A stretch of DNA of 64,000 nt from Camelus dromedarius. Its lineage: Eukaryota. The stretch lies in contig NC_087466.1 of NCBI RefSeq assembly GCF_036321535.1, positions 2,046,001 to 2,110,000 on the forward strand. Direction: 5' to 3'. Both the position numbers and the translations under genes were made by a program. The notes under the pieces are model-generated. The model saw only the letters and a list, made by a program, of their open reading frames with translations. It was not told where the DNA came from and ran no database searches. Positions 18,921 through 44,270 of this stretch are shown piece after piece. Positions within the stretch are counted from its first letter, which is position 1. Each line of letters starts with the position of its first letter.

Positions 18921-20439
18921 GAGACTTCTGGCAGTCCCTCCGGGTTCCGGGTCGTTCCTAGAGCAGGCAAAGCCCAGAAGCTGGATCCTGAGGGGGTTCA
19001 ATGCCCTGGAATACTGTCCTCCAGGAATGGCATCTGCTCACAGACTGCACACCGGCACCCGGAGTCCTGTCCCTGTACACCTTCGCGAGGAGGAAGGGGC
19101 CAAGGCTGCACTGAGCTGAGGAAAGGGGATGGGGACTTGGACCAGGAGGGGCAGGGTCCCTGTAGTATCTCCCAGGCCCCTCTCCTGTGCCACACTGCAG
19201 CACATGGACAGCAGGTTGCTCACCCAGAGACGTTGATGGAGCTGGGTTGGAGTTCCCTGGGGCTGTGAGCACAGAGGAGCCACGTGCCGTGGCAGGCCAC
19301 CCCACCCCCACCCATTAGTACACATTAGCCTGAGTACTTTGGCAGCCTCAGTTCTTGGAGCTGAGACCTGAGGGAAGCGGGCTAGAGGGGTGAGTTCCCC
19401 CAAGTGCAAGAATGAGCTTGCAGTGACTGAGCTGCAGGAAGTCCAGCCACACTGAAGGGAAGTGAGCAGGTAAAGAGTGGCTGGAGAGGCAGGCAGGGGC
19501 CTGTAGGGAGCCCTGCTGCATTTAACCAAGCTCTGGAAGGCTGCAGGGGGGGCCTTGCAGCAACGGGGGCAAAGGGGCAAAATGGTATGTGGGCAGATCT
19601 TCAAGCAGTGGGGAAGCAAAACAAACTAACTTCAAGTCTGGTCCCCCTACCACCCCCACCAACCTAGACACATAAGCCAGTGTCAGGGAGACCCCCAGAA
19701 GGCGACTGTGTCTGCATATCAGGAGAGATGAGTGAGTGTGGAGATGCCAGCAGCATATCCTGCCCACAACCAGAACCTCTGTGCCCAGTTGGAAGCCACA
19801 GCCAACCAGCCTCAGGCAGCCTTCACCGTCTGGCATGGCCTTGAGCCTGAGATCATCTCAAAATGTGCCCAGGACAGCAGCCTCAGAGAGGGCATAGAAG
19901 CAGAGGGCGAAGTAGTGGCCGCTCCTGGTCTTAACTGCCATGGGGCTGAGAATGGGTGTCCCACCCCCTCTAGGCAGAGGCCCTCAGGCATTTGCCCTCC
20001 AGGGCCCCCCTGCCCCCACTTCCTTGAACACTCCCTTCACCCATTACTGACAGGCATCCCCTAGGTTTTTCCATGTCCTTGTGTAGGTGCTGAATGACAA
20101 TCAGAGCTTAGTACACACACAAAAGTCACTCCCAACCAGTGGGTCTGTCTCCTTTTAGCCAACAAAAAGAATTGTTTTTCAAGCTGTGCTCAGCCTTCAC
20201 AGCAAACAAACGGAGCTGGGGATGCTAGAGGATTTTTCTCGCTGACACTACACTTCCTGCGTGTTCTCGGATTCCCTGCACTGAATCTTTAGTCAGAAGT
20301 ACAGAATCAAGCTCCTGTCTCCTCAAGGTCTGAGAACAGGGACTGGACACACCAGGGCCAAGGAGAGATGCAGGCACAGTGGAGAACTGGCCGAAGAGGA
20401 CAACGGAGGACCACAGAGAATACCTGGAGGGGTGGACAA

Positions 20440-21500
20440 ACGCGGCCTAGGCCAACCAAGTGGGTGGGCTCCGGAAAACATGGCGGCCGTGGTGTGGCCT
20501 CGTAGATCCCCTCCTCTCACGCCCACCTGGCGGAGAACCCTGAAAGCAGCCTCCCTTTGCTGAGAGTGGGCCTGCCCCCGACCCCTGACCCTCAGCTGTT
20601 ACCACTTTTGCCTCCTCTGCCTGGCCGGCCACACGCACCCCCCGCTTGTTCCTCCATCGGCCACAGGACTGTTGTCTCGTGAAGGGACTTCCAGGGACGG
20701 GCCCTCCCCGCCCCCCTCTGCTCAGCAGCCTGCAGTGGCCTGCCGCCCAATCCTCGGCTGAAAAGCGGCCTCGGCAGTTCTCGCGCGCCGAGCGGGCTGA
20801 GGCCGCGGAAGCTCTCGGGCCTGCCGGCCTGTCCGCCCCTGGAGGCTCTCCAAGCTGACCGCACCCCGGAGTCCCGGCCTACAGCCCGCTGTCCTCACGG
20901 CCCCTGCTGTGATGGAAAAGGCAAAAGCCGCCGCGCCGTGACCAGGCCAGGTCGCGGAGAGAGGCTGCTCCCGTGGGCCGCCGGCTAAAGGCCGCAGACT
21001 GTCAGGGAAGCTCGGAGGTCCGGAAGCGCTCAGAGGCTTCCCGGGCCCGCTCGTGAGGGAGGTGCGGGTGACGCCAGGAAGCTCTGGGCCCGACAGCACT
21101 CGAGGAGCCGAGACCGGCGGGGGCGGGGCGGGGGCGGGGCTCGCGCCCGGAAGTCGGGAGGCGCGCGCTGATGGCGTCACGGAGCCCCAGCCGGCTCAGG
21201 TCCGTACATGCGCACGGCCCACGGGTGGCTTGTTGCGGTGCAGAGAGCGCCGTTCCTGGTCTTAGGGCCTGGACGTCGGTACCTGGACCTCACCTGCAGC
21301 CTTCAACCCCCAGACGCGGCCAGCGCAGCCACCATCGCCTACTCTACCCAACGGCCGACTGTCCACGCTGGACACTGCCAAGGGCGCTCCTGACGCGCCA
21401 GCCTGAGGGGACATCCCCCGACCTCCCCACCCCCCACCAGGAGACGCCTCAGTTTCCCTGCGCTGGACCCCGCCGCGGCAGCCTGCCTTCTGCCCCGCCC
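20440..21500. promoter_or_regulatory. Orphan CpG island with housekeeping-promoter motifs and no coding gene
   Basis: YY1 aaacatggcggc 20476-20487; ETS ccggaag 21020-21026 and ccggaagt 21147-21154; tandem GC boxes ~21119-21140; half-CRE cgtca 21175-21179; NRF1-like catgcgca 21207-21214. Confidence 0.7.
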
Positions 21501-22739
21501 CTAGACCACTGCACACCGCTGCTCCCTCTCCTTCCAGCACGTCCTCACCCTCGACCTTTGCCCAGTAATCTACACTGTCCTTCAGGCCCTACCTACTTGG
21601 CCTGTGTGCAGCAAGGGGGCCTGTTTCTTTTTCCCCAGACGGCCCCCTTCCTGTGTTCTCAGACCCAAGCTCCCGTAGGGCAGAACCTCGGCCTGTAGCT
21701 CACCCTTGTGTCTGCTCCCCGAGCAGCTTTTTGCTTCAGTGTCCCCATTCTAAGCCATGGGAAAGGAGATGGGATCAGGAGATGAGACCAGGAGGTCCAC
21801 CAGCCTCTCCACGGCTACCCTGCCACGTTCTACCTGCCTGGCCAGTTCCAGTCCAGCCACCTGCTGCCGCCTTGGGCTCAGGCCACATCCCCATGGAAGA
21901 GAATGCCAGGGAAACCCTATGGTGCAGACCCAACCCCTCTAAGTCCCCCACTCCCGGAGCCTGTCTTGAGTGGGGGCTGGGGGTATGTTCCCTACAGAAG
22001 GCAGCAGTGAGCACAGGCCTCACACCTGGACAGTGGGCCTCCTGCCAGGACCGTTCCTCCTCTCTGCCACCCCCATTTCTCAGATGGGAAACCCAGACAG
22101 AGACAGAGGACCCATATGAGACCTATGGAGGCACAGGCCTGCACAAACCCACCCTGCCCCACTTAGTGAGGGGGCTGAAGATAATCGGTTGGGGAGGCAG
22201 CAGTGGCATCACATCAGCCGGGTTGGGAGTCTGTACCATGAGATGGGACCCCCAAGGGAAAGATGGAGGGTCTGCAGGCAAGGGCTTCTTGCTGGGCTCA
22301 GTCAGCATCCCCCTGGTCTGCCACCTGCTTCCTGGCCATGTGTAATGAGGAGCCAGGTGTGTGCCTTGCTTTGGAACCTCTGCTCGGTGGCCACACTGAA
22401 CTCACCCAAGGCCACAAGGGGTGAACAGGTCCAGAGATGGAGTGCAGAAGGGGACAGGATGGGGAGGAGCTGGCTCAGAGAAGGGAAGGGATCCTGGAGG
22501 ATGGGCAGGAGCTATGTTCCCTGATTCTCCGAAGAAGCTGGCCAAGTGGAGGCTGAAGCCAACAGCCTGGCTCCGCTCACACTTGCCGGGCCAGGTGCAC
22601 TTGTAGCCCATTGGCCTGACGGACCGAAGGGTCCATCCCTTCCTCTGGTCCTCGGGACCAGGCTTGGCCCGGTGACAGCTGGGGAAACCAAGATCAGCCC
22701 CGGGCCTGGATCACAGGTCCCGTGGCCGCTCCACCGAAG

Positions 22740-23110
22740 GTTTCACCGCGCGCGCATCCCGCTGACAATTGAGTGGCCAAAGCAGATTAACCTGGGTGCT
22801 AATCCCCGCTAATGGCTTCAGAATCCCCGGCACCCAGCGGCTAAGCCGGCCTTTCTCCGCGGCACGGTCAGCCCTCCCCGGCGGCCTCAGCCCGCGGCTG
22901 TGCGATGGTATCTCGGCCCCGCCGCGCTAATCCCCGCGCTCGCTTTCTTCCCGGGCCCGCTCGAGATCGGCCGATCGGCGCTTGATTATGGCCGCTATCG
23001 AGGGCCTCTTTGTGCCATCGGCCCCAAATCCCCTAATTCCGTGATAAAGGAGGCATTAGCGGGCGTTTGCTGCAGAGAAAGGCGCCGAGATGAAAGAAAG
23101 CAATCAGGGG
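22740..23110. promoter_or_regulatory. CpG-rich candidate enhancer with a homotypic K50-homeodomain (TAATCC) site cluster
   Basis: gctaatccccgc at 22798-22809 and 22926-22937; agatta 22784-22789; taagcc 22842-22847; tgatta 22983-22988; TGACA (TALE) ~22763; additional TAAT cores and a GATA site. Confidence 0.65.
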
Positions 23111-24689
23111 GATCCTGATGGCCTCGCCTGCCAAGCTGGAGAGGGGGCGGGGGTGGATGCCGCAGGGAGAGGAAGAGTGGGGGGCCGGATCCCCACCTCC
23201 AGCCTGAGTCCACCTTCCCCCGCCCGGGGCTGCGCCCACGACCCAGCCCCGCCCCGACCAGGGCGCCATCTCTGCTGGATGCTGAGGTACCACGCTTTCC
23301 CCAACTAGCCTCACGTCTGCACTTGCTGGGACCTGACCCCCAAACCTGCCCTGGACCTTGCTCTGGACCTTGCAGGTTTCTGACTGTCAAAGCCAGTAGT
23401 CTCTCAGGACTCATCCAGATCCATTCCTTTGGCCCCTGATGCACCTTCGACCCCTCCCCAAACCCTGGGGGCCCTGCACCCCCATCTGCCCCTCTTTTGT
23501 CACTGACCAGCTTTGACCAGTCCTGGAATCAGCCGGCTCTGCTCTTCAGTCCGGGAAACAAGTGAAGGCGTCCAAGAGCGACTGGGATTGTCGAGGGAGG
23601 GTGTGCAGGGGGAGGGGGAGGCTGGGGCTGGGACCTCTGGTGGAAAGCAGGTAGGGTGAGCAGGGAAGGCCCCTCTGCAGAGGCCATACTGAACCCCAGG
23701 AGGGGACTGAGAGGGCTGGGCTGGCTGTGAGCTGGGCGCATTGGCAGACTGGAGCCTGGAAAGCTGGAGGGAGAAGACAGAGGCTGGATGGGGCAGACGG
23801 ACAGAGATATCCGAGTCCTGGAGCTGGGGGAACGCAGGACTGATCCTCTTATCCAGAGCCTCTGCGGGGGAAAGTGATGATTAGATGTGTGCGTAGAGAG
23901 CTCTGTAGCAGGCTCACTTTGGGTAGGGTGTTAGTTGAGGAAAGTGTCAGGGAGTGGGTTGGAAGGCCATTGTGGCAGCCCAGGTGGCCAGCATCTGTGC
24001 TGGCACTGATGGGGGGGAACCAATGAGATGGGACCGAGGGGAGTGTCAAGTCCTGCTTGAGGTTTGAGGCTTGGGTAGCTCTGGGGGTAGATGTGTCACA
24101 GAGGTGCACGGGTAGGTGGGTGGCTGGTTGGTTGGGCTACATACCTGGGTGGGCAGGTGCACATTTCCCAAGGTGGACTGGAGTCTAGGTGTGGTTTACC
24201 CAGGCGGTGAGGTGGATAGGTGGGCCCTTTACCAAGGTGGACAAGTGGGCGGGTGTGGACCAGCAGGTGTTGTTGTGGAGGCTGCTGGGACTCCGTCCAG
24301 ATGCTTCAGGGGTCAGTGCACCGGTCCTGCTCCTCTGGGTGTTAGCACCAGTGGTGCACAGGGGCCTCCGCCTTGGAGCACTGCCCTGGGCGATGGAAAT
24401 GGCCACATGGCTCACCCCAAAGCTGGTGTCTGCTTCTACGGCCACGGGCAAAGGGAATAAAAGACCAGTCTCTGCTTTGCCTTGAGGCGATTCGAATTTG
24501 AAGCAGCCTGTGTCTGCCAGAGCTTTCACAGAAGAGGACGCTGGACTCCGACCCAGATGCCTTTTGCTTAGTGCTCCCTCCACCCCTCACCCAGCCCTGT
24601 CCTACTTCCAGGGTGACCAGCCATGTCACCCACCCTGTTGGTCAGTTTCCCTGGAGGCAGAACTCTCCATGTGCAAACCAGGATGGTCC

Positions 24690-25108
24690 TCACCCTGTGC
24701 TTCTGTTGCACCCCACCTCCCAAGAGGTGCCGAAGTCCTCAGCCTTGGGACCTGATTTGGAAGCAGATGTAATTAAGATGTAAATTAAGATGAGGTCATG
24801 CCAGAGTAGGGTGGGTGCTTCACCAATATAACTGATGTCCTTGTAAGAAGGGAGCAGGTGCCATGTGAAGACACAGGCAGGCAGGGAGAGCACCATGTGA
24901 TGGCAGAGGCTGGAATGAGGCACCTGCAGGCCAAGGATCGCCAGAAACACTGGCCAAGAGAGGGCCGTGGACAGGGCCTTCCTCAGAGCGTGGCCCTGCC
25001 AACACCTTGACTTGGACTTCCGGCCTCCAGAACTGTGAAGGAATCCATTTCTGTTGTTTTAAGTGGCCTTGTTTGTGGTTCTTCGTTAAGGCAGACCTAG
25101 CAAAGCAG
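24690..25108 (+). mobile_element. MLT1 (ERVL-MaLR) solo LTR
   Basis: taagatgaggtcat...ctgatgtccttgtaagaag...ggccctgccaacaccttgacttggacttccggcctccagaactgtga...atttctgttgttttaag are MLT1 hallmarks. Confidence 0.88.
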
Positions 25109-26720
25109 TACCGATCTCTTCACTCGTCTTTTGAGAGCACACCCTTGAAAATCAGTAATTTGAACAAGAGCCCCCATCAGGCTTTGCTTCTAGGGAGCTT
25201 GACCTAAGACAGCTGGTGCCAAGAGTGCTGGTCCTAAGAAATGGATTCTAAGAGTGGCGGCCTGAAATTGGATCACTCGCCAGCCAAGTGGCAGCGAGGG
25301 ACCATCACTGGTGGCAGGTGGGGGACTGATAGCCCCTGGCATGGGTAGCAGTGTGGCAGTGAAGACCGTCACCTGGGAGAACTGGGGTGGGAGACAGGTG
25401 GAGGGGAGGCTGGTACAACGTCTCAGCACTTGACAGGTAGGGAGGAAACAGTAACCATACGGGCTGTGGAACCGGGTGGCTGTTAACAAAGTATTACTGA
25501 GTCCTTGAGGGAACGTGGCAGGCTGAGATAGATTAATCAAGGGTAGAAAGGAAAGTGAGTGTCAGAGGCCGCCTGGCACGTGTCAGGAGACCCTGCAGTG
25601 CCGGACAGACAGAAATGAAGACAAGGCACCACACTCAGGAAAACACAGCAGGACTCCCGGCAAGGTGGCCTCGCAACCCAGACAAGCCTCTTGCATCAAA
25701 CTCAGGGCCCTGATGGCGAAGGAGTGGGACCCTGACTCCTGAGGTGGGGATATCTTGAGCACTTTGAACTCCATGCTCTACATTCTCTGTGCCTGCAGAA
25801 GCAGCCAGCTCCCTCTGTGGTGAAAGGCAGTGCCTCCACTTCCCAGCAGAGCTTGCAGAGACCTCAGAGGAAGCAGGTGCCTCATAAAGTGTTTGCCTCT
25901 GGGTCTGCCCCACTCCCCTGCTGGCCACCACACCCCAAATTAGGATCATCTCAGCATAGACCAACTGAAGCGGGAGGGCAGGGCTGGCTAAGAGGTGCTG
26001 GCAGGAACCCAGATGCCTGGGTGTGGGGTGATATCCTGGGGTGACAGATCAGGGCAGTAGGCTACAAAGACAGATGAGGTAGAGCAGGTGCTCTCCTGAG
26101 ACTTGGGGACTCTGGCAAGAGCCCAGGAGGTCACTCGAATATGCCACCACGATGGCCTTGGACAAAGCTATGGCTTAGAACAAACAAAATAGAGATGCTG
26201 GAGCAGCCATGGAAAAATGGAAACGAAGAGGTCGGAAAACTCAGAAGGGGGCATGTTCAGTTGCGTTTACTGTTTGTTAGAAAAGCCACAAGCTGCCCAG
26301 GTCTTCAGAGGGGCCTGGAGGATGCTGTGTCTTTTCCATGATGTTGCTTTCCGCCCATCAGGATCGGTACTTGAAGAGCATCTCTGTAGACAGCATGCAA
26401 TTATGTCTAACTTTTTTTTTAAAGTAAACCTGACAGTGTCTGCCTTTTAGTTGGGGTGTTTGTTCCACTTAAATATAAGGTAATTGTTGCTGTAGCTGAA
26501 CGGAGGTCTGACATCGCGTTGTTTTCCCCATGTCCTGTCTGTTTTTGTTTCTCTAACCCTCCTTTCCACTCTCCTCCCAACTCACTGTAACACAGTTAAG
26601 AAGTCCATTCAGTTTTTCTATTTTTAGCTATACCATTTTGCCTTTTTTACTGGTAGCTGTAGGAATTACAGCATATCACCTTAACTTTTTTGCAGTCAAC
26701 TTACAGTTAGAATTGTACCA

Positions 26721-26869
26721 CTTCTTGGGGGGAGGGTATAGCCCAATGGTAGAGTGTGTACTTAGCATGCATGAGATCCAGGGTTCAATCCCCAGTACCT
26801 CCATTAAAATAAATTTTAAAATAAACCTAATTACCTCCCCCCAAAAAACAAAACAAAACAAAAACAAAA
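26721..26869 (+). mobile_element. tRNA-derived SINE (camelid-type) with 10-bp TSD
   Basis: ggggagggtatagcccaatggtagagtg...gggttcaatccccagtacctcc...aaacctaattacctcccccc. TSD aattgtacca at 26711-26720 and 26870-26879. Confidence 0.92.
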
Positions 26870-27073
26870 AATTGTACCAATTCATGTAAAATGTAAGAAC
26901 AATGGGACTGCATGGTTTCAGTCACTGCCACACCCCCTGTCTTTTTGTGATAGTGGCTGTGTGTTATAAACACCAAGATGACATGCTACAGTAGTATTTG
27001 TTTTATGCAGTTATCTATATTTTATAAAAAAAAAAAAAAGAAAGAATCTTACTAAAGAACTTCCTTAGGTATT

Positions 27074-27211
27074 TCTTGGGTTTGGTTTGGTTTGGTTTGT
27101 GGAGAGAGGTAATTAGCCTTATTTATTTATTAATTTATTTTTTAATGGAGGTACTGGGGATTGAACCCAGGACCTTGTGCATGCTAAACACATGCTCTAC
27201 CACCCTGCCCC
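27074..27211 (-). mobile_element. tRNA-derived SINE (camelid-type), antisense
   Basis: gaggtaattag...ggaggtactggggattgaacccaggacc...gcatgctaaacacatgctctacca. Confidence 0.88.
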
Positions 27212-28959
27212 ATAAATTTTATGTATGATAAGACTTGTATCTTGAATATATAAAGAAGTCTCACAGTCCAATAATAAAAAAGGGAAATAAACAAAATTTT
27301 TGAGCTCCATTGGCCCTATGTGCATGCTCCACGCTGGAACATCCTCTCAAAGTAAAGGACCCATAGCCACGCCCTGCACTCCTGGCCACAGAGGAGAACA
27401 CACTGCAGGGGTGCAGCTTTGGGTTTTGGAGGCAGCATGTCCTGCACCTGGGAATCCCACCTGAGCCATTTGCTGGGTGATCCAGAGCCTTCCAGCTTTG
27501 AGTATAGCCCAGAGCAGAAAAGGGGTCTGCAGTAGACCCTGTGATCTGGCAGAGCCCAAGGCAAATGCTACAGCAGGGAAGGATTTCCGATGGAGCCCCC
27601 GGAAGGTTTCAGTGGGCAGACTCCCAGCGTCTGGAGTGAGGCCATGCCACACACCATTCACAGAGCAGCTGCTGGCATTTTCCTGGGCCCTGCAGGAACG
27701 GAGCCTTGACCTTGGGCTACCAAGTGGCCCTGTGGCCAGAATGGCTCATCAGAGCAAGGTACTAGGTACTGGGTACCGTCAGAGCTGCCAGGACTTTAGG
27801 GGCCATCACACAATGAAAGAGGCGGGGCCAGGATCAGCTCCGAGGACCCGAGTCAGCTGCATAAGCAAGTGACTGCCACCCTGAGTGGCTTCGCTCACTG
27901 ACACCTCGGTGGCCCTGAGCAGCAGCGTTGGACAAGCCCTCTAGAGGGCAGAGCTTCTGAGGACCACATGTCATCCACCCTGTGAGGAAGAGGAGACATG
28001 GCCCTGGGGCTGCAGCAAACAGTGCAGCCGGTTGGTCCAGGAGCCCAGACACAGCAAGAGTAGGAGTTTGGAGACAAGGAGGTGACAGGAGGAGGCACCA
28101 GGAGAGCGAGGGTTCTGCTGGGTTTCCCACTGAGACACGTGATCTAGACCCAGGGATGGAGCAGGAATGCCCACTCCCCAGTTCTCCCAGCAACCCAGCT
28201 GGGGAATTTATGTTCCCATCCTCAAAACTTCAGGTTCTGGGTCCTGGGAGGGGGGACGTTCAGGGACACAGTAAGAGTTGCACAAAACGTAAGCTATGAT
28301 AGCTGCCAGTCACTCTGGGCTCCTTGTGGCACCAAGCAAATGGGTCCCCACTGGGCAGGGAAGGGAGACACGGGTTCTAGGAACAGGGATGTTTCATCTT
28401 CTCATTCACTGGGTGTCCTGAAGCGCTCCCTTGCTCAGCGGTCACTGGGAGGGGGTCATGACAGCCAGCGCAGCCTGAGGTGGTGTGATGCCCAGGGACT
28501 CAGATCCCTGAGGGGGAGGATCTGGGTCCCCGCAGCAGGTGAGCTGCCCAGACCTTCAGAAGTCTGGTGGGAGAGGGGCTTCTAGAAAGGTGGGGGAGAT
28601 CAGGGGTGGCGCCTGGTTGCAGACTGGGAACCAAATTAAGCTGCAGCCGAAGCCCACGCACTAGCCTCCCTCCCCTACTACTGTCCAGAAATTGTGCCTG
28701 GCCACAGCCCTGGGGAGGCCGACTGCAGTGACCTTAACATGAGAGCAGGTGGGCTGAAGACGCAGCGCTGCAGTAAGTGTCCCCGGGGGTGTGAGCTGGT
28801 CACTTGCAGCTGACCCTGTCCCTGGAGCACCGCTGACCTTGGCGGGGAGGCTGTGCACCTGACCTCACTCGAGGTGGCCCCAGACCCCTAGGCTGAAGTT
28901 AGTCAGCCTCCTCTGGCATCTTCCCCTCCCTCAGGTGCTCCCCCCGCCACAAACACTGC

Positions 28960-29560
28960 TATCACCATCACTCTGATGTTGCCTTTTTCAAAGTGCCTCT
29001 ATGTGCAGTCACAGTATGTAGCATTTTGAAACTGGTTCTTTAGGCAGGACAGTGTTGGTGAGGTCCTCTGTATTGTCGCGTGTGTCGCTGTCACTCTGGG
29101 TGGCACCCTGGTGTGCCTAGACCCCAGACCTCGTCCTGTTCATCCGCTCACCAGCTGATGGGTGTCTGGGTTGCTTTCAAGTTTTGGTGGTGATGAATAG
29201 AGCTGCTCTAAACATTCGTGGGCGGTGTCTTGTGGAAGCAGAAGATTTCATTTCTCCGGGGTGAATCCCGGGGATGGAGTTGCTGGTTTGTGCTGGAGGT
29301 GTACATCTGATTGTAAGCTGGCTGGTTTCTTTTCAACATTTCCCTCTCCTGCTGGAGGAAGCCACCCCCACTGGGCATCTCCGTAGCTACATCATCTGCC
29401 TCGTTAGGTACACATCCTATTTCCCATTCTACAAAAGGTGACAATGTCGCTAAATGTCTTGTGACCCCACAACTAGGGTCTCCTCCAGTGCTTTCTCCTC
29501 CTTCCCCTAGACCCATCATCAGTTTCAGCAGGGTCCTCCCGTCCCCACACCGTCCATCCC
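28960..29560 (-). mobile_element. Old L1M 3'-end fragments, antisense
   Basis: gggttgctttcaagttttggtgg...gagctgctctaaacattcgtg...atttcatttctccgggg...gagttgctgg L1M pattern. Confidence 0.65.
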
Positions 29561-30439
29561 CCAGGCCCGAGGCTCAGCGTTACTACCGGCATCCTCCCCT
29601 TCCAGCACTAGAAACTGTCTGGGTACCTTGGGCTACACAGCAGCCCCTCCCACTCAGTGCTGGGGACACCGCAGTCACCTCTTATTGCTGCCTCTCACGG
29701 GTCTCACTTAGATGTCCTGCAGTTGCAGGCAATGGTGGCTGGGACGGAAGCCACCCGAAGGCTGCCCCACCCCTGTGCGGTGTTCACGCTGGTTGTTGGC
29801 TGGTCCTCCAGCTGGAGTTGCCAGCTGTGTGTCCACTCCTTGTGGCTGCCGGTGCCTTGTCGCAGTGAGGTGGCTGGGCTCAGAGAACAAGCATCCCAAG
29901 ATGGTATCTAGGCTTCACAGCTATAGGAGGTCCCCAGAATGCGGAGGGATAAAGGTGGTGGGCACAGCCTTCCTGACCACTGACCCTGTTCCTGCCCCTG
30001 AGAGGAACTGACTTTGATGCATAGTGGACCCCTAGGTGCCTCTCTGACCTAAATGGTGAGCATGCGGTTCTGGGAGGAAAGTTGGCTGGGAGAGGTTTCC
30101 ACAGTCATCCAAAGGGACATGTGGGAAGAGATGAGAAGTCTGGGGCCGTGGCAGCCATCGTGCAACTACGAGGTGGGCCACTCAAAGAGATGGTGGCTCC
30201 TTCATTAAGCTTCCAGATTAACAAGCCCTGGGCACCCTATGTCAGGACTCCTGTGTCAGAAGTAGAGTCAGCAGGTTCTGTCACTTGAAGTCCAAAGTGT
30301 CTTCATTGATACCAGAATGGAGTCAGCAAGAGAGTTTGAGGAAGGGTGTGAGAGGCGGAGGAGAAGCGAAATCACGTGTGGCTCCCCTAACGGTACCTGC
30401 CATTCACGGGGGCCCCTGCTGGGGGGGTTCTAACCCCTC

Positions 30440-30560
30440 ACACACAGTCACTGGTTGAGCCCTCAGAACATCTGTGATTTGGGTCGCTATTGTTATGTCA
30501 GCCTACAGATTGGAAGATTGAGGCACAGTGGGTGAAGGAACCTACCCCACAGAAGGGACA
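30440..30560. mobile_element. MIR SINE fragment
   Basis: cctacagattggaagattgaggcacagtgggtgaaggaacctaccc. Confidence 0.55.
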
Positions 30561-31414
30561 GCTAGGGTACTAGCCAGGTGGTCTGCTGCTCTGTCCTGTG
30601 AGCCACACAAGCACTTTTCAGAGGTCCAGAGAAGGCCTTAAGCAGAAGCCCTGACCAGCTGGTCAATGGTGCTTAGATGAGGATGAAACAGTCTTCCTCG
30701 AATTTGGTAAAGTGCAGGTCACCGGCAATGTTGGGCAGAATGACCACAGAGGATGGGGTGAACAGAGCCAGACTGGTCTGGGTTGAAGAGTGGGAGAGGA
30801 GGACACCGAGTCAGCTCTGGAGACTCATGGCTGTGATGAGGGTGGGGAGGGAGTGTGGTGGTTTGGGGGGCGGTTCTGGGTTATATAGGAAAGCAAACGA
30901 GAAGTGTCTCCAGAGCTGGGAAGGGCGGCCTTGGGTTGGGTCCGGAAGGTTCACTGACCCAGGAGGGAAGGCAGGTTTCCTGAGGAGCAGATGTAGCTTT
31001 CCTCTGGTGCCCCGTTTCCGTCCTGAGCTTGGGACCTGGATCCTAAGTGGAGAGGGTGTGAGTAAGGGAGGTTTGGGATCAAAGTGCGGTGGGACCGCGG
31101 GGTTGCTGATATTAGGCCCCACTTGAGGATGGAAGTCAAGAGTTTGGGGGCCAGGAGACTGTGCCGTTTAGGGATTTCTCCGGACTCGCTCTTCCACCTG
31201 GGTAGGACCCTGAAGGGGACGAGCAGCCTGCCCTGGCCTCGGTGGCTACCGGAGGAGGGGACCCAGGGGCTGGGCCAGGAGGCGCCGCTGCGCTCAGGGA
31301 CTGCCGGGTCCAGGCGTCCTCGGGCCGCTGGCAGGGCTGGACCGCAGCGCCGCGGGTCAGGGGCACGGATGCGGAACACAAGGCCCCCCGCGGACCCTAC
31401 CCCCCGCCCGCCGC

Positions 31415-31520
31415 CGCCGGGGATTAGCGCGTTCCTGGCTGTGCGGTGGGATTAGCCCGCGTGGACCCGGCGTCCGAACCGGGGATTACGGCGCGCCCCG
31501 CCTCGACGGATATATTCCCG
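31415..31520 (+). promoter_or_regulatory. GSC2 proximal promoter with three GGGATTA (TAATCCC) K50 sites and a TATA-like element
   Basis: gggatta at 31420-31426, 31448-31454 and 31482-31488; tatatt at 31511-31516; ATG at 31560. Confidence 0.8.
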
Positions 31521-31559
31521 CGGCCGCGGCGGCGGCGGCGGCCGCGGCGGGCGGGCGGC

Positions 31560-32714
31560 ATGGCGGCGGCAGGGGGCGCGGCAGGCCGCAGGGGCCCCGG
31601 GCGGCCCTGCCCCTTCTCTATCGAGCACATCCTCTCCGGCCTCCCCGAGCGGAGCCCTCCCGCCCGGGGCGTCCGCCCGCCGCCACCCGCCGGCCGCCAG
31701 AGCCCCGCGGAGCCCGGGGCGCCCGAGGCGGCACCCTGTGCCTGCTGCTGCTGCTGCTGCTGCGGCCCCCGCGCGGCGCCCCGCGGGCCCCCAGAGCCGG
31801 CCGCCGGGCTGGGTGAGTGGGCGCAGGGCTCGGGGGACTCCGGGCACGGCGGGGGCGCAGCGGAGCTCGGCTCCCGCCCCGCGTCTCACCGCGCGCTCTC
31901 CCCGCAGGCGCGCGGCTGCCGTGGCCGCTGAGGCTGGGGCCTGGGGCGCCCTTGCCCTTGGCCGCGCCGACCGGAGGCCCGGGGGCGCTACCCGGCGCCG
32001 GTGGTCCGGGCCCGCAGCGGCGCACGCGGCGCCACCGCACCATCTTCAGCGAGGAGCAGCTGCAGGCGCTGGAGGCGCTCTTCGTGCAGAACCAGTACCC
32101 CGACGTGGGCACTCGCGAGCGCCTGGCCGGCCGCATCCGCCTCCGCGAGGAGCGCGTGGAGGTGGGTGCCCGTCGTCGCCTCTTCCGCCACCTCCGAGGA
32201 GCAGGTCCGCGGTCCCAGGCGAGGGGTGGGAGCTTGAGCGGAGGTCAGGCTTGTTTTTTCTTTAGTTTTAAACCACCCGCGCCCCGCCCCCATGAGAAAT
32301 GAGGTGCGCATCCCTGTTTCGGAATTTGGGAAGCTTAGGAGAGCGCAAAGTTGCAGAGGGGGCGTCCCGGGTGCCGCCAGGCGGAGTCCGGGCTGGGAAG
32401 GGGCAAGCAGGGATGCCGGTCCGGGTGGGAAAGAGGTTCGGGTCCCGCAGCAAGAGCCGCCGTCCCCACCTGCAGCGGTTGAGAGACAGTGGCACAGCCG
32501 CTGCCCAGGGCCGGCTCCGCAGCCAGGGTCCCGAAGCCCCGCCAGTTGATTTGGGGAGCCGCGCGTTTCGCGTGCCCTGGGGCCAGGCCTGCCTGAGCGC
32601 GTCTCCTTCTCTCAGGTCTGGTTCAAGAATCGCCGTGCCAAGTGGCGACACCAGAAGCGCGCGTCGGCGAGTCTCCTGCCCAGAGCCAAGAAGGCCTCGA
32701 AGGAGAGCTGCTGA
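31560..32714 (+). CDS. GSC2: Goosecoid homeobox 2 (paired-class K50 homeodomain), 3 exons, 201 aa
   Basis: Exons 31560-31812, 31908-32161, 32616-32714 (606 nt, GT-AG). eh1 motif FSIEHIL; homeodomain [48 protein letters not shown]|[15 protein letters not shown]. Confidence 0.97.
31743..31763 (+). repeat. (TGC)7 coding repeat giving poly-Cys in GSC2
   Basis: tgc x7 in exon 1, [13 protein letters not shown]. Confidence 0.95.
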
Positions 32715-34389
32715 CGGCTCTGGGAGTTACCCCTGGGCTTGGCCGGTCCCTGGGGCCGGCTCAGGGAGAGGACAGAGGTGTCCTGATCGGAGCTGGGAGA
32801 GGAGACCAGCCTCTTCCGTGATGTCTGTACAGCTGCCTGTGCCCTTGAGCTCGGCGCAGGACCCCTCTGCATGTGGCCCAGCGCCGCCTGCCCCGGGGAT
32901 GAGAGGGCGTGTATGCCCGATGCTCTCTGTGCGCTCTCCTCCCCAAAGGCAAGAGGGCAGGAGGGCCGGTGAGATTCAGGGGTGGGGTTGCAGGGCACAG
33001 AGCAGGTCAACTTCTTCAACCCCTCACCACACCCCAGGAGGGACTAACATGCCCTGGGACAGGAGCTACCCCTTGTCAACACCCCGAATCCCCTTCCCCT
33101 CCTCCACATGCTGGCTCCCTCCTCTCCTCAGCAGGACAAAGCCCCCTTGACCTGGCCTGTAACCCTCCCGAGGCGGGGCCTGGGCGTCCCGACTTGCAGA
33201 ATAAGGAGCTTGGGTGAGGTCATCTCCAGAGCCCCTTTACTACGCCTCAGTTTTGAGTCCTGTGTGCACTGAGAAATAAGTAAGCAACTACAGACACTGA
33301 AAAAGCAGTCCAGACCCCGAAGTCCTCGATGGCTCCACTCTGTACTCAGCCAGGACCTGCCCGTCTTCTCTCCTTCCTAGGGAGCCGGGGCAGCTCGTCA
33401 CAGCCCAGTGAGTCCTCAGTCCCTCTGCCAGGGTGCCCTCAGCAGAGCAGACTGCCCCACGGATCATGGCCCAGCACCCTGGGGGCCTACACTGGCCTCT
33501 AGGAGCTGCTTCTTGGGTGGGGGTCCTTGGCTTCCCCTCTGTGGGGGGTTTCCATGCAGTAGCATCTGCCTTCCCCCCAGCAGTCAACTCTGCCTCCCTG
33601 TGGGGGCAAGAAGAGGTTTGATTGAGGAGGATCCCTCCCCACTGCCTTGGAAAATGCCTGCTGTTCCTCCATCACCCTGGCCCTGTGGTGAAGGACATCA
33701 TGAGAACAAGGCTTCAGTTCCCCGAGTTGGCCTGTATAGTGGACGCGAGGCACCTAACACACCCTCACCTGGCTCAGGGACCTGGTTCTGCCTCCTCACA
33801 GGTTCTGGAGGAAATGGGGCGGGGGTAATCTGGAAGGAGACACAGGCCATCCACAAAAGGTGCAGAAGTCAGGGTTGCAGCTTAGATAACACTAAGTGCA
33901 AGGGGTCCCCAGCCAGGGCTACCCTAACACTGCCAGGGTCTCTGGGACAGTGGCTCTCACTCACTCGCAGGATGCACACTTCTGTGTGTCACAAAGCTCT
34001 TCTCCCTGAACCCTGAACTTATTCCTGGAGACTGCACAGACTGCCCGCAGAGCTTTCTCACAGGCTGGGACATCCTCATCTCCCTGGGTCCCAAGACCCT
34101 CACCCTCATGGGCTGAGTGGCTATTTGTCACTGTGCAGGGCACCTGTGATCAGAGCTCCACTTTCAAGGGACCAGTGGCCATGCTGCCCTCCTGGTTTTT
34201 CCTTCATCTGCAGCTGTCTCAGGCAGGCTTGCCCCATAGTGACCATGAACGTCGGGGGTCCTTTGGGCCGTGATCATGCACTTGCCTCTAATCTCCATCC
34301 TCACCCTGGTTTATCTCTTCTACCCTCTGATTCCCATCCCCGTCCCACATTGACATCCCAGCCCAGGCCTCTGGCCTGTGCTAGACAGT

Positions 34390-35130
34390 TATATCCAGCC
34401 GTCCCTTTGATTACTCCACCTGGAAGCCCACAGCTCCTCTAAGTCACCTTGTCCACAGCAGTCTCTTCCCCTGTGCATCCCAGGTGCATGAGCCAGGGAG
34501 CTGGCAAATACCCCCACCCCTCCTCTTCCTCACCCAGCAAACCCAGGCCAACAGCAAGTCAATTTTACCTCCAAAAACAATCCCAGAATCTGTCCTCTCC
34601 CAGCTTTACCTGCACCTACCTGATGAAAACCACCGTCATCTCTCACTTTGACTGTTGCAGCTGCCTTCAGCTTGTCCTCCTGCACCCACTCTTGTTTCTC
34701 TGTAATTCATTCCCTGTAAAATCCAGGGTGCAAGTCTGAACCTACCTCTCCCCTACCTACAGCAGTCCAAGGGATTCCCACTGCTCCCAGAGCAAAGACA
34801 AAACTCTCCTTGGCCCATGACCCATGAGGCTTGTGCAGCCTGGCCCTGTTCCTCTGGCATTGGTCGCCACCCCGCTGGTCCTTGCACTCTGTGTATCCAA
34901 AGGTCTCCTCCCACTGGGTCTTCACACATGCTCTCCCTCCTCCGCCTCGCCAATGTCTGCTCATCCTTTGGATCTGCAACCACTCCCTTCCCTGGGGAAA
35001 CTGCCGCTGGCTGCCTTCTGGGTAGGATGCCCCGTAGAGGAGACTCTTTTCTTGTGCCTGCCTGCTGCAGTTTCACGCTTGTCTGTGAGATGATCTGACT
35101 GGTGTCTGTCCTCCGCGGCTGACTGTCAGC
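34390..35130. mobile_element. L2 LINE 3' fragment
   Basis: gtcaattttacctccaaaaacaatcccagaatctgtcc...ctcactttgactgttgcagctgcct...gactgtcagctccatgagggcagg are L2 hallmarks. Confidence 0.65.
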
Positions 35131-35519
35131 TCCATGAGGGCAGGAATCATCACCATGGATTCCCCAGTGAATGCGGGAGTAACTGCCTAACGGAATCATT
35201 CTGGGACAGAACATATTTGACATATTTCACACCCTCCTTTCAGGAAAAAATGATCATTCCTCCAAAATGCTTAGGCAATTTTCTGGTCCATTTCAATGAG
35301 AATTAGCCTTCTGGGAATTTAGGGACCAGACATTTCTTGCATAAAGTTCGAATAAAAACACTGAAACGCGTATATAATGAGATTTTCTGAAGAGTGTGTT
35401 TTTGTTTATAATGTGGAAGCATACGCGGCGATTATTTGCAAGCTATTGGAATTCCAAGGCCTTCCAATTCCGAAGTGCTGGAATTTTTCACGGTTAGCGG
35501 GAACGCGCGCCCTTGAGTC

Positions 35520-35786
35520 CCTCCACCACAGTGCCCCCTGGCGCCCACAGCCTAGACACGCAGGGCCAGAGCGGGGCGGGACGAAGACTACAACTCCCAT
35601 AGGGCAGCATGCTCGGATGACGTCATCACGGAGCGCGGGCCGGCCTGGCTCCTCCATTGGTCGGCTGACTCCTCCATTGGTCGGCTGACTCCTCCATTGG
35701 TCGGCTGCCTCAGGGGCCTGCGCAGCTGGCGCGCCCCGCCCCCCGCCCGTGACGCGCCGCTCCGCCCGGGAAGTGCTGGGATAGCG
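35520..35786 (+). promoter_or_regulatory. ESS2 CpG promoter: CTCF-like site, ZNF143/SBS, CRE, 3x CCAAT, ETS
   Basis: agtgccccctggcgccca 35530-35547 (CTCF-like, minus strand); actacaactccca 35587-35599; tgacgtca 35618-35625; attgg x3; gggaagtg ~35768. Confidence 0.85.
35649..35707 (+). repeat. Perfect 20-bp tandem repeat x3, each copy with a CCAAT box
   Basis: ctcctccattggtcggctga at 35649-35668 and 35669-35688, and 35689-35707 (last base absent). Confidence 0.96.
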
Positions 35787-38700
35787 ATGGAGACGCCCGG
35801 CGCGCCGGCCCGGGCCCTGCAGCTGTCCGCCGCGTCAGGGCCCCGGAGGAAGCGCGCGGCGGGCGAGGCGGGGGCTGTGACGAGCAGGCAGCGGGTCCTG
35901 GACGAGGAGGAGTACATCGAGGTGGGACTCGGCGCCGACGCCCGCGTCTCCTGGGCTCCCCGCCCCCGCTCCCCCGGGTCCCAACACCCTCGTCTCCTCG
36001 AGGAGGTGGAAGAGCCGAGTCCCTGCGTCGGGGTGTGGACAGTCGGAGGGCCAGACAAGCACAGGGCGGAGCGAGGTGTCCTTGCAGTCGGGGAAGGGGG
36101 TGGATGTGTTTGTATGATGTGGGGGTCAGGAGAGCAGGGTGTTAGTGAAGCATCAGTAGGAACTTGGGAGGACGCGGCCAAGAGCGTTTCCTGGAGAGCT
36201 GTCAGAGCAAGTGCTAAGACCAGGGGTTCTGGAAACAGGCTGCCACTAGTGGCAGCATCGAGTGGTTGGGCCTCCCAGAATCCTTGAAGTAGATCTTAAT
36301 CCTACCGCAAACCCTCGGGGGGAGGAGCTGGCACGGGGCTTGGAGGCAGTCGCTTAAGTTTGGGAGGTCTCTGGGACATGCAGGCAGTTGGCATGAGTGG
36401 ACAGCTGGATGCACAGAGAAGCAGCTCAAGAGCAAGGTCCAGCTGGAGGTGCAGAGCTGGGGATGTCAGCCAGTGCTGGTGGTGGGGGTGACAGGCAGAA
36501 GTTGTCCAGATAAAGGGTTCAGATTGGGAATAGGAGGTCACAGGTGGAATGAGGTGCCAGTGCCCACACTGGTCCAGCTGGTGGGGAGGTGGAGCCAGCA
36601 GAGGAGCTAGAGAATGACAGGTTAGTGAGGGAGCAGGAAGGCTTTGCAAGTGTCCCCCAGCTCTGGGGATCATTGGGCTGGACAGAGGTTGGGGGCCTCA
36701 GCTTGTACATCGTGAACTGAGACGCAGGGGAGAGGCAGACGGAAGCTCTGATGGGTGTCCTGATGCCTCCTTCAGGGCCTCCAGACTGTCATCCAGAGGG
36801 ACTTTTTTCCCGATGTGGAGAAGCTGCAGGCTCAGAAAGAGTACCTGGAGGCAGAGGAGAGCGGGGACCTGGAACGGATGCGCCAAATTGCCATCAAGTT
36901 TGGCTCTGCCCTGGGCAAGATGTCCCGGGAGCCCCCGCCGCCCTGTAAGAGAACTCCCATGGTGTGGGCAGGGTGGGGGCTCCACTGAACTGTTGTCTCA
37001 GGCTTTCTCTAACCCCCTACCCTTCTCTTCCCCGAGACGTGACTCCAGCCACGTTTGAAACCCCCGAGGTGCACACAGGCCCCGGGGTGGTGGGTAACAA
37101 GGCCCGGGGCCGGGGCCGTGTCCTGGAGGATGGCGATGGTAAGTGAACATCCTCCTTCTGTCTCACTGCTAGGTTTGCCCAGGAACCTGATCCTGTTGGG
37201 CCCTGGGGTGTCCAGGGGCGGAACACATATTGTCCCTGGGGCCTCTTAGCCAAAATGGCGACCTGTGGGGTCTAGGAGCACTGGTCTGGCAGGCAGATCT
37301 GAGTCACAGCTCCCAGTAATGGGGAGTCCTCTGAGTCTGCAGTGTGGGAGTCTCAGCTCCCCTCTCCCTGCCCTGCTCGCTGTATGCCCTCCCCTGCCCA
37401 GTGGGCATCCTGGGCCTCAGAGAGCTCCTTCCCTTGCTGTTTCTTTAAGATGCCTCGGGGTTTCGTGGTTGCATCTCCCAAGCTGGTCCCTCTCCTGGGC
37501 GACTGCTCAGCCAGCCAGCTCCTCCTCTTCCTTCAGGTCTCTGCTCAGACGCTGCCCGTTGGGGAAGCCTTCCTGACTGCCCAGCGTAAAGTCACGTCAG
37601 CCCTGCACTCTGTGCATTGCTGCCTGGTTCTGTTTTCTCACCTGAGGACACATTTTAAAAGGCATTTCTGTTTGTATACCACCTCTCTCTGCGAGAGCGG
37701 TTTCCCTTGCTCTGTCTGCACGGCCTACACCTAGAACAGTGCACGCCGACCGTCTCCAGCACGATCCTGGGGTGTAATGATTCACCTGGACTTTTGCGGG
37801 GAGCCTTTCCCAGAAAGAGTCCCGTGAATACAGTGCACAGTGGTCCCTGGGCTCCTCCCAGTTGCTGCTTTGTCAGCGGTGGGATGTGTGCATGTGGACA
37901 GAGGTGCGCTTGCTTACCCAGGCTCACATCCATGGCACACATGCCTCTGCTCGCACACTGACCTGATGTTTCCTGCTTCAGAACCCCGCCTTCCACCATC
38001 TGCACAGCATCCTGGTGTCCTTGGAGCTTGGTTCTCCGTTGTAGCATGGCATGTGAATCATAGGCAGTTGGCAGAGTCTTTTCTGTCACGTGTTACTTGT
38101 TAGAGGATCCAGGAGTCATCTCAATAATCTGAGCGTAGATACAGTGTCATTCAGGTCACAGGCGAAGCCACCAAGGCCCCGGGAGGCAGTAACTTCTGCA
38201 GGACTCAGGGTTATTGGTCGTGGGATGGGGTCTGAGTGCCCATTTTTCTCACACTAGTCTTGAACTTTTAGCCACCGTGCTTTGTGTGTGGTCTAGCAGG
38301 TGGTAAGTAGACGAGAAACTGCTGGTGGGGAGAAGAGGCAGACCCCTAGCGTGCCCCCCCACCCCCACGGTCTGCGCTGCACCACCTCAGTGGGGTGCCC
38401 TTTTGCTGCTGGTTGCCAGGGTGGCCTGGGTTGTGGCCCAGTGCCTTTGACTGTTCCTCCCCACCACTGTCACTGCTAGAATAAAGAGGGTCTTTGTCTT
38501 TAGGTCTACAAGCAGGTCACAAAGCTTAGGTGACAGTCACTCACCTGTGGCACAGGGACTAGGAAGAGAGGACATCCCAGGGACAGAGGGACAGCCCAGG
38601 GCTCTGGAGGGCTGGCATGGGTTTGGCAGGGTTAGACCCGCCGTGGTCCTCCTGCCCAAAGGCTTACTACTGCCTCCCAGTCTAGGTCAGAGACCACACT

Positions 38701-44049: not shown

Positions 44050-44264
44050 GGCCAGGCCTGTGCTGAGCCCACAGGCAGCTCTCTGCCTAGCAGAGGACTC
44101 CGGCTTTCTGGAGACCCAGGCTTGGGCCAGAAGCAGTGAGCGTCCGGGAGCCACAGAGGGAAGGTGCCAGGCTGGCAAGGGATCGTCCCCGTGGCCCTCG
44201 GGGTGCACCTCAGGCCCCACTGATACGTTTCTACTGCACCCCTGCCTGTTTGTATTTAACCGTC

Positions 44265-44270
44265 AGTAAA
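44265..44270 (+). terminator. Candidate ESS2 proximal poly(A) signal (AGTAAA variant)
   Basis: AGTAAA ~215 nt after the stop, preceded by tgtttgtattt. No canonical + strand AATAAA was noticed before TSSK2. Confidence 0.5.

What the first reader, a model, noticed from the sequence alone, without database searches (positions are those of the whole stretch)
22740..23110. Distal K50-homeodomain site cluster sharing an extended motif with the GSC2 promoter: candidate GSC2/OTX autoregulatory enhancer
Seen: a ~370-bp CpG-rich, repeat-free, non-coding block 8.5 kb upstream of GSC2. It contains the identical 12-mer gctaatccccgc twice (22798, 22926), plus AGATTA, TAAGCC, TGATTA, several other TAAT cores, a TALE TGACA and a GATA site. 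Copy 2 (gcgctaatcccc, 22924-22935) is the exact reverse complement of the first GSC2 promoter site (ggggattagcgc, 31419-31430). Established: K50 homeodomains (GSC, GSC2, OTX, PITX, CRX) bind TAATCC, with TAATCT and TAAGCC as secondary sites. Gsc2 expression is highly restricted (interpeduncular nucleus), and Gsc2-null mice are reported to lose Ess2/Dgcr14 expression there. Inference: enhancer plus promoter form a feed-forward or autoregulatory circuit that may also drive neighbouring ESS2, and the element lies inside the 22q11.2 deletion interval.
Basis: partly seen in the sequence, partly recalled or inferred. Interest (0 to 1): 0.72.

Follow-up and report, generated by a model that had tools for sequence, protein, structure and literature searches.

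The report
Ancient conserved enhancer upstream of GSC2
A 365-base non-coding block 8.8 kb upstream of the camel GSC2 homeobox gene is a real, homeodomain-site-packed regulatory element that has stayed next to GSC2 from fish to mammals, so it is very probably a GSC2 enhancer, though who binds it is still untested.

Summary
The two GCTAATCCCCGC 12-mers, the reverse-complement match to the first GSC2 promoter site and the other motifs are all at the stated coordinates. The block has 7 TAAT cores in 371 bp, against a mean of 0.26 in GC-matched windows.

The window is a Camelus genome. Window 22763-23127 is the best-conserved non-coding block between SLC25A1 and GSC2. Identity to camel is 86% in seal, 84% in gelada and 79% in mouse. 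Recognisable blocks lie 1.6-3.2 kb upstream of gsc2 in crow, Xenopus and a teleost, where the upstream neighbour gene is different. It is non-coding, shows no RNA-structure signal, and in placentals it is a small orphan CpG island.

Homeodomain hexamers are far more conserved than the rest of the element (39 of 42 positions against 151 of 323). K50 site 1 is kept down to fish. K50 site 2 is kept in mammals and frog. Only the (C)TAATCCCC core is conserved, not the 12-mer.

The promoter's three GGATTA sites and its TATA box are conserved in five placentals.

Best reading: an ancient distal GSC2 enhancer with K50 and other homeodomain, GATA and SOX inputs. GSC2 autoregulation is plausible but untested, and would probably be negative. 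A role for ESS2 has no motif support. This is a new member of a known kind, of moderate interest.

The parts
22763..23127 (.). Core conserved non-coding element (candidate distal GSC2 enhancer)
   Evidence: Identity to camel is 79%/382 bp in mouse, 86%/410 bp in seal and 84%/385 bp in gelada. Crow matches in two blocks at 77% and 75%. It is the peak of three-way identity, 0.78-0.835 against a mean of 0.456.
22500..23250 (.). Small orphan CpG island around the element
   Evidence: CpG o/e is 0.84 here against 0.09-0.3 in the flanks. The orthologues score 0.92 in seal, 1.0 in gelada, 0.67 in mouse and 0.2 in crow.
22763..22771 (+). TGACA (TALE-type) overlapping an E-box CAATTG
   Evidence: Invariant in 4 mammals. 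Crow keeps TGACA and an E-box in the form CAAGTG.
22784..22789 (-). AGATTA (TAATCT, a secondary K50 site)
   Evidence: Invariant in all 5 amniotes. The teleost has GGATTA at the same place.
22800..22807 (+). K50 site 1, TAATCCCC
   Evidence: TAATCC is kept in camel, seal, mouse, crow and teleost. Gelada has a 1-bp insertion, reading TAATGCCCC.
22810..22815 (+). TAATGG homeodomain core, 10 bp from site 1
   Evidence: Invariant in 5 amniotes and the teleost, and the 10-bp spacing is kept.
22842..22847 (+). TAAGCC (secondary K50 site)
   Evidence: Invariant in 4 mammals but not kept in crow.
22909..22914 (-). GATA core (TATCTC)
   Evidence: Invariant in 5 amniotes. Frog keeps TTATCA.
22928..22935 (+). 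K50 site 2, TAATCCCC
   Evidence: TAATCC is kept in 4 mammals and in Xenopus (ATAATCC). Crow has AAATCC.
22983..22988 (-).
23026..23047 (+). AAATCCCC-TAATTC followed by TGATAA (GATA); the most deeply conserved stretch
   Evidence: AAATCCCCTAATTC matches 14 of 14 in Xenopus and 15 of 15 between mouse and frog. The teleost keeps AAATCC..GAATTC..TGATAAAAG.
23054..23059 (-). CATTAG homeodomain core
   Evidence: Invariant in 4 mammals; 4 of 6 positions kept in crow.
23090..23107 (+). ATGAAAGAAAGCAATCAG block; binding factor not assigned
   Evidence: 17 of 18 positions invariant in 5 amniotes.
31419..31490 (-). GSC2 proximal promoter: three GGATTA (K50) sites at 31421, 31449 and 31483
   Evidence: All three are conserved with 28-29 and 34 bp spacing in camel, mouse, cat, macaque and dugong.
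31509..31516 (+). TATA box of GSC2
   Evidence: TATATATT-type box conserved in five placentals, about 45 bp upstream of the ATG.
31560..32714 (+). GSC2 coding region: exon 1 about 31560-31811, exon 2 about 31910-32161, exon 3 about 32616-32714
   Evidence: Exon 1 has the eh1 motif FSIEHIL. Exon 2 is 100% identical to Camelus bactrianus GSC2. Exon 3 reads WFKNRRAKW.

Best explanation
Window 22763-23127 is an ancient distal cis-regulatory module, most probably an enhancer, of GSC2. It is a dense array of conserved transcription-factor sites: seven homeodomain TAAT/ATTA cores, two of them optimal K50 (OTX/PITX/GSC-class) TAATCCCC sites, plus two GATA cores, an E-box, a SOX-like core and an unassigned 18-bp block. 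In placental mammals it is embedded in a small orphan CpG island. The proposed mechanism is inferred, not shown. In the few hindbrain neurons that express GSC2, an activating K50 factor (OTX2, PITX2 or a similar one) and other homeodomain, GATA and SOX factors occupy the module. The module then contacts the CpG-island, TATA-containing GSC2 promoter, which carries three conserved K50 sites of its own. GSC2 protein has the same binding specificity and an eh1 repressor motif, so it would compete at these sites and damp its own transcription, as its paralogue Gsc does. Shown here: non-coding status, conservation, synteny with GSC2, and site-level constraint. Inferred: enhancer activity, the identity of the binding factors, and the direction of any autoregulation.
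For: In the 10 kb upstream of mouse Gsc2, this is the only strong match to the camel interval (79%/382 bp, E 2e-82; the promoter is only 70%). It is the top block downstream of SLC25A1 in seal and gelada, and the peak of three-way identity (0.835 against a mean of 0.456). Collinear blocks lie 2.2-2.6 kb upstream of crow GSC2, 3.1 kb upstream of Xenopus gsc2 and 1.6-1.8 kb upstream of a teleost gsc2, although the upstream neighbour there is a THADA-like or MADF gene, not SLC25A1. Homeodomain hexamer positions are invariant at 39 of 42 against 151 of 323 elsewhere in the element (Fisher p = 2e-9), and at 42 of 42 in the four mammals. There are 7 TAAT cores against 0.26 expected. The promoter K50 triplet and TATA box are conserved in five placentals, and proximal K50 clusters also occur in crow, frog and fish. 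It is non-coding: frame-breaking indels, stops in all frames, and no 3-base periodicity. There is no Rfam hit and no covariation support. CpG o/e is 0.67-1.0 in mammals, which fits the orphan-CpG-island poised-enhancer model for CpG-rich promoters (bioRxiv 10.1101/2020.08.05.237768). GSC2 (GSCL) binds bicoid-type sites (Gottlieb 1998, as cited in PMC551538). Gsc autoregulates negatively. The eh1 motif is present in camel GSC2. gsc2 expression is restricted in both fish and mouse.
Against: There are no chromatin, binding or reporter data, so activity and sign (enhancer or silencer) are inferred. K50 site 2 is lost in crow, and site 1 carries a 1-bp insertion in the gelada assembly, so neither site is absolutely required. 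The fish and frog matches are short: individual E-values run from 1.8e-5 (crow against frog) to between 0.03 and 0.4, and they rest on collinearity and position. Only 8 species were sampled. Marsupial and armadillo DNA could not be fetched, and human DNA was deliberately not fetched. ESS2 is also always adjacent and could be a target or co-target.
Confidence: 0.6

Rival explanations
1. It is a Polycomb-bound orphan CpG island or silencer. Its main job would be to keep GSC2 (and the neighbourhood) repressed outside a tiny cell population, rather than to activate it.
For: It has CpG-island character in four placentals. GSC2 is silent almost everywhere. Homeodomain repressors with an eh1 motif, such as GSC2, could act through the sites.
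Against: The crow orthologue is not CpG-rich (GC 0.36, o/e 0.2) yet keeps the factor sites. What is conserved is therefore the site array, not the island. Poised enhancers combine both roles, so this overlaps the best explanation rather than excluding it.
Confidence: 0.15
2. It is the promoter or first exon of an unannotated non-coding transcript. My recollection, which I could not verify, is that a lncRNA is annotated between GSC2 and SLC25A1 in human. Conservation would then reflect promoter function.
For: It is an orphan CpG island. RNA-labelled runs hold 0.59 of the sampled words of 22400-23500.
Against: The same RNA runs also hold the non-conserved flank 23100-24200 (0.36 and 0.17), so the signal is not specific to the element. 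No gene is called at this position in the camel, mouse, seal or gelada records. Conservation to fish is confined to short factor-site blocks, with no conserved splice donor or transcript-like stretch. Read-level evidence could not be obtained.
Confidence: 0.1
3. It is an enhancer whose real target is ESS2 or another neighbour, with GSC2 only a bystander.
For: ESS2 lies directly downstream of GSC2 in all eight species. Dgcr14/Ess2 expression is reported lost in Gsc2-null mice (PMC6554986).
Against: ESS2 is broadly expressed and conserved down to yeast, which is atypical for a target of a homeodomain-dense conserved element. There is no conserved K50 site at the ESS2 start. The element always lies on the GSC2 side, and GSC2's own promoter shares the K50 sites. 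SLC25A1 is excluded because it is not the neighbour in crow, frog or fish.
Confidence: 0.1
4. It is a chance cluster of AT-rich motifs in neutral GC-rich DNA.
For: TAATCC is not enriched over the whole window (13 seen, 13.2 expected). The identical 12-mer flanks are not conserved.
Against: None of 451 GC-matched windows reaches even half the TAAT count. There is 79-86% identity across placental orders, and recognisable blocks reach down to fish.
Confidence: 0.01

Closest known systems
Conserved non-coding elements (CNEs) acting as developmental enhancers of homeobox genes
   Same: It is non-coding and conserved over roughly 430 million years (standard dating of the teleost-tetrapod split). It keeps synteny with a homeobox gene while other neighbours change, and it consists of tightly packed transcription-factor sites.
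   Different: It is short (about 365 bp), very close to its gene (1.6-9 kb) and stands alone rather than in a gene-desert array. Identity at fish distance is confined to blocks of 14-40 bp. No functional assay exists.
Goosecoid (Gsc) promoter with K50 sites and negative autoregulation (Danilov et al. 1998, as cited in PMC5318956)
   Same: It concerns the paralogous gene, with the same K50 specificity and the same eh1/Groucho repressor motif, and TAATCC-type sites sit in the gene's own control region.
   Different: For GSC2 no binding or feedback has been shown. Here the sites are split between a TATA promoter triplet and a distal module. Homology between the Gsc and GSC2 control regions was not tested.
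Orphan CpG island-associated poised enhancers (Pachano et al., bioRxiv 10.1101/2020.08.05.237768)
   Same: In placentals the site cluster sits in a distal CpG island, and the target promoter is itself a CpG island (o/e 0.93).
   Different: The chromatin state is unknown. The crow orthologue has no CpG island, so the island is a mammalian overlay on an older site array.
OTX2/CRX/PITX-bound K50 enhancers
   Same: The optimal (C)TAATCCC sites match the usual K50 consensus, and the secondary TAATCT and TAAGCC forms are present.
   Different: There is no palindromic P3 (TAATNNNATTA) dimer site. The K50 sites are a minority of the conserved sites in the element.

Membership tests
Conserved non-coding element / developmental enhancer | Not protein-coding | tested here: met
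   Among the four mammals, each species shows 2 to 8 indel runs not divisible by 3. There are stops in all six frames in every species. Camel-mouse mismatches are 28/24/27 by codon phase.
Conserved non-coding element / developmental enhancer | Conservation clearly above the surrounding non-coding DNA, across distant lineages | tested here: met
   Three-way identity is 0.835 against 0.456. It is the only strong hit in the mouse 10-kb upstream region. Blocks are found in crow, frog and teleost.
Conserved non-coding element / developmental enhancer | Synteny with the putative target kept through rearrangements | tested here: met
   It lies upstream of GSC2 in 7 species, while the upstream neighbour is SLC25A1, a THADA-like gene or a MADF gene.
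Conserved non-coding element / developmental enhancer | Enhancer activity (reporter assay, open chromatin, H3K27ac/H3K4me1) | not testable with these tools
   No chromatin or reporter data are available here. No paper on a Gsc2 enhancer was found.
K50 (bicoid-class) homeodomain target element | TAATCC/GGATTA cores present and under constraint | tested here: met
   Site 1 is kept from camel to teleost (gelada has a 1-bp insertion). Site 2 is kept in 4 mammals and frog. AGATTA is kept in 5 amniotes and reads GGATTA in fish.
K50 (bicoid-class) homeodomain target element | Palindromic P3 dimer site TAATNNNATTA, typical of paired-class cooperative binding | tested here: not met
   The positions of the seven cores give no TAAT-N3-ATTA pair. 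The closest arrangement is two direct TAAT cores 10 bp apart.
K50 (bicoid-class) homeodomain target element | Occupancy by OTX, PITX, GSC or GSC2 protein | not testable with these tools
   This needs ChIP, CUT&RUN or EMSA. The only support available here is the literature statement that GSCL binds bicoid-type sites.
Autoregulatory loop of the Gsc type | The factor's own recognition motif in its own promoter or enhancer | tested here: met
   There are three conserved GGATTA sites at -77 to -139 and two TAATCCCC sites in the distal element.
Autoregulatory loop of the Gsc type | The factor binds these sites and changes its own transcription | not testable with these tools
   No data. The direction is inferred as negative from the eh1 motif and from Gsc.
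Orphan CpG island / poised enhancer | CpG o/e above 0.6, GC above 0.5, at least 200 bp long, and away from any annotated start site | tested here: met
   Camel 0.99, seal 0.92, gelada 1.0, mouse 0.67. No gene is called there in four records. The criterion is not met in crow (0.2).
Orphan CpG island / poised enhancer | H3K27me3 plus H3K4me1 and Polycomb binding in pluripotent or precursor cells | not testable with these tools
   No chromatin data.
Structured non-coding RNA | Match to a known family, or covariation supporting a fold | tested here: not met
   No Rfam hit in 20000-25000 at E up to 1, apart from an unrelated weak hit at 24686. The RNAalifold covariation term is +4.2, a penalty.

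The most novel reading that the evidence does not exclude
The distal module and the promoter K50 triplet would form one circuit as old as bony vertebrates. An activating K50 factor (OTX2 or PITX2 class) would switch GSC2 on in a small tegmental or nucleus-incertus population, and GSC2 would hold its own level down through the same sites. The unbroken GSC2-ESS2 adjacency from fish to mammals would exist because ESS2 sits inside this regulatory domain. That would explain the reported loss of Dgcr14 in Gsc2-null mice as a cis effect rather than a trans effect.
Probability: 0.15. Interest if true: 0.6.

Novelty: new member of a known kind. Interest (0 to 1): 0.42.

Why it matters
GSC2 marks a very small, evolutionarily conserved neuron group near the interpeduncular nucleus and nucleus incertus, and it lies in the 22q11.2 deletion interval. 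Nothing about its transcriptional control turned up in the searchable literature. A compact element of about 365 bp, conserved from fish to mammals, gives three things: a concrete reagent (a driver for these neurons in several species), a short list of testable upstream factors, and a clean way to ask whether GSC2 feeds back on itself and whether ESS2 shares its regulation. It does not change any general principle; it is a good example of a known class.

Tried and rejected
1. Flanks that fell short. GSC2-anchored 10-kb flanks in cat, macaque and dugong stop at about window 27200, so they say nothing about the element. I re-anchored on SLC25A1 for seal and gelada.

3. Coding exon: rejected.

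4. Structured RNA: rejected.

Word shares in RNA-labelled runs are similar for the element and for a non-conserved flank, so this is inconclusive.

6. The 'conserved 12-mer' idea: rejected. Only the (C)TAATCCCC core is shared across species and between enhancer and promoter.

7. K50 input at the ESS2 promoter: no conserved site.

8. Literature. No paper was found on a Gsc2 enhancer, or on Gsc2 together with Otx2. Gottlieb 1998 and Funato 2010 are not held, so they are cited only through papers that cite them.

9. The genomic position of LINC01311 could not be confirmed.

10. Not done. Human DNA was not fetched. The two N runs (6633-6768 and 50731-50876) were left alone.

Full report
**What is there**

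- GCTAATCCCCGC occurs at 22798 and 22926.
- The only other match with one mismatch or fewer in the 64-kb window is the first GSC2 promoter site (3 matches, 0.18 expected, 0 of 100 shuffles reach 3).
- Window-wide, TAATCC is at chance level (13 seen, 13.2 expected). In the GC-rich part it clusters at two places only: two sites in the block and three within 67 bp at the promoter.
- The 371-bp block has 7 TAAT/ATTA cores. In 451 GC-matched windows the mean is 0.26 and the maximum 3. It has 4 K50-type sites against a mean of 0.12.
- It sits in a small CpG island (o/e 0.84) flanked by CpG-depleted DNA at 0.1-0.3.

**Context**

The window is a Camelus genome.
- GSC2 exon 2 is 100% identical to Camelus bactrianus GSC2.
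- Window 21585-31600 is 99.4% identical to a C. bactrianus chromosome.
- On the + strand lie SLC25A1 exons at about 14.9-17.2 kb, then the element, then GSC2 (ATG at 31560, with the eh1 motif FSIEHIL in exon 1), then ESS2.
I did not test that. I did see intact clathrin genes at the same position in seal and gelada.

**Conservation**

I fetched the orthologous loci by exact look-up of GSC2 or SLC25A1 proteins of other species.

| Species | Match to the camel element | Position |
|---|---|---|
| Mouse | 79% over 382 bp, E 2e-82 (window 22763-23127); the only strong match in the 10 kb upstream of Gsc2, and better than the promoter (70%) | 5.5-5.9 kb upstream of Gsc2 |
| Seal | 86% over 410 bp | downstream of SLC25A1 |
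| Gelada | 84% over 385 bp | downstream of SLC25A1 |
| Crow | two collinear blocks, 77% over 66 bp and 75% over 146 bp | 2.2-2.6 kb upstream of GSC2; upstream neighbour is a THADA-like gene |
| Xenopus laevis | 100-bp match to the crow copy (E 2e-5); 14 of 14 match to camel AAATCCCCTAATTC | 3.1 kb upstream of gsc2; again a THADA-like neighbour |
| Teleost (Aldrovandia) | two collinear blocks (see below) | 1.6-1.8 kb upstream of gsc2 |

- In a camel/seal/gelada alignment of 8 kb of intergenic DNA, the element is the identity peak: 0.78-0.835 against a mean of 0.456.
- The two teleost blocks reproduce GGATTA-N-TTAATCCCC-NN-TAATGG and AAATCC..GAATTC..TGATAAAAG.
- The fish and frog matches are individually weak. 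They are collinear, correctly placed, and fall on the stretches that are most conserved in amniotes.
- The element has therefore travelled with GSC2, not with SLC25A1, probably since the bony-vertebrate ancestor.

**What kind of sequence it is**

- It is not coding. There are many frame-breaking indels, stops in every frame in every species, and no codon periodicity.
- It is not a known or structured RNA. There is no Rfam hit, and RNAalifold gives a covariation penalty of +4.2.
- Constraint falls on transcription-factor-site-sized blocks. The seven homeodomain hexamers are invariant at 42 of 42 positions in four mammals and at 39 of 42 in five amniotes. The rest of the element scores 151 of 323 (p = 2e-9).
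- Also conserved are two GATA cores, an E-box, a SOX-like core, AAATCCCC and an 18-bp block at 23090-23107.
- K50 site 1 is kept in camel, seal, mouse, crow and fish. The gelada assembly has a 1-bp insertion in it.
- K50 site 2 is kept in four mammals and frog. It reads AAATCC in crow.
- The flanks that make the camel 12-mers identical are not conserved. Only (C)TAATCCCC is, and that is the ordinary optimal K50 site (established knowledge of OTX/CRX/PITX/GSC motifs).
- The CpG island is a placental feature: o/e is 0.67-1.0 in mammals and 0.2 in crow.

**Promoter**

- The three GGATTA sites and a TATA box are conserved with fixed spacing in camel, mouse, cat, macaque and dugong.
- Crow and Xenopus each have three K50 sites within about 550 bp of the ATG, and the fish has one.
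- A distal module plus proximal K50 sites is therefore a shared layout.

**Mechanism**

The best reading is a distal GSC2 enhancer that integrates K50, other homeodomain, GATA and SOX inputs, and talks to a CpG-island/TATA promoter that also carries K50 sites.
- The orphan-CpG-island model of poised enhancers fits the mammalian form.
- GSCL/GSC2 is reported to bind bicoid-type sites (Gottlieb 1998).
- Its paralogue Gsc represses its own promoter (Danilov 1998).
- GSC2 keeps the eh1 repressor motif.
The activator would be another K50 factor.
- All of this is inference. No binding, chromatin or reporter data exist in what I could search.

**ESS2**

- ESS2 lies immediately downstream of GSC2 in all eight species, which is notable.
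- There is no conserved K50 site at its start.
- The reported loss of Dgcr14 in Gsc2-null mice could be a cis effect of the targeted allele.

**Limits and rules followed**

- What I say about motifs inside that stretch comes from alignments made earlier and from local counting on them.
- RNA-labelled runs hold the element (0.59 of sampled words) but also a non-conserved flank (0.36 and 0.17), so the signal is not specific.
- The N runs were left alone. Human DNA was not fetched; gelada and macaque stand in for primates.
- Marsupial and xenarthran loci could not be served.

**Verdict**

This is a real, deeply conserved GSC2 cis-regulatory module with constrained K50 sites. It is a new member of a known kind, it is experimentally tractable, and it is of moderate interest.

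Noticed in passing
window 20500-21500: A second, larger CpG island (GC 0.73, CpG o/e about 0.9) lies in the SLC25A1-GSC2 intergenic region. It is only moderately conserved between camel, seal and gelada (0.47-0.58), and no gene is assigned. It could be the promoter of an unannotated transcript.
   Followed up: partly
window 31560-45000; L002, L003, L004, L005, L006, L013, L014: An ES2-domain gene (ESS2) lies directly downstream of GSC2 on the same strand in camel, mouse, cat, macaque, dugong, crow, Xenopus and a teleost. The upstream neighbour changes: SLC25A1 in placentals, a THADA-like gene in crow and frog, and a MADF/BESS gene in fish.
   Followed up: partly
window 30062-30334: A second conserved upstream block lies about 1.3 kb before the GSC2 ATG. 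It is shared with macaque (71%), dugong (73.5%) and cat, and a 48-bp core is shared with mouse (81%). It may be a proximal regulatory element.
   Followed up: no
window 22972-22976: A CCAAT-type site (ATTGG in seal, gelada, mouse and crow) reads ATCGG in camel only. This is a lineage-specific loss inside the conserved element.
   Followed up: no
L012 about 19590 (gelada orthologue of window 22800-22807): The gelada assembly has a 1-bp insertion inside K50 site 1 (TAATGCCCC). It could be a real primate change or an assembly error, and should be checked in other primates.
   Followed up: no
window 31720-31745: GSC2 exon 1 encodes a run of seven cysteines after 'CA' (CACCCCCCC) within a Pro/Ala-rich stretch.
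   Followed up: no
window 22400-24200: RNA-labelled public runs, mostly 'reproductive system metagenome' libraries, hold both the element and its non-conserved flank in part. This suggests host DNA carry-over or diffuse transcription rather than a discrete RNA.
   Followed up: partly
window 6633-6768 and 50731-50876: Two N runs (136 and 146 bases).
   Followed up: no
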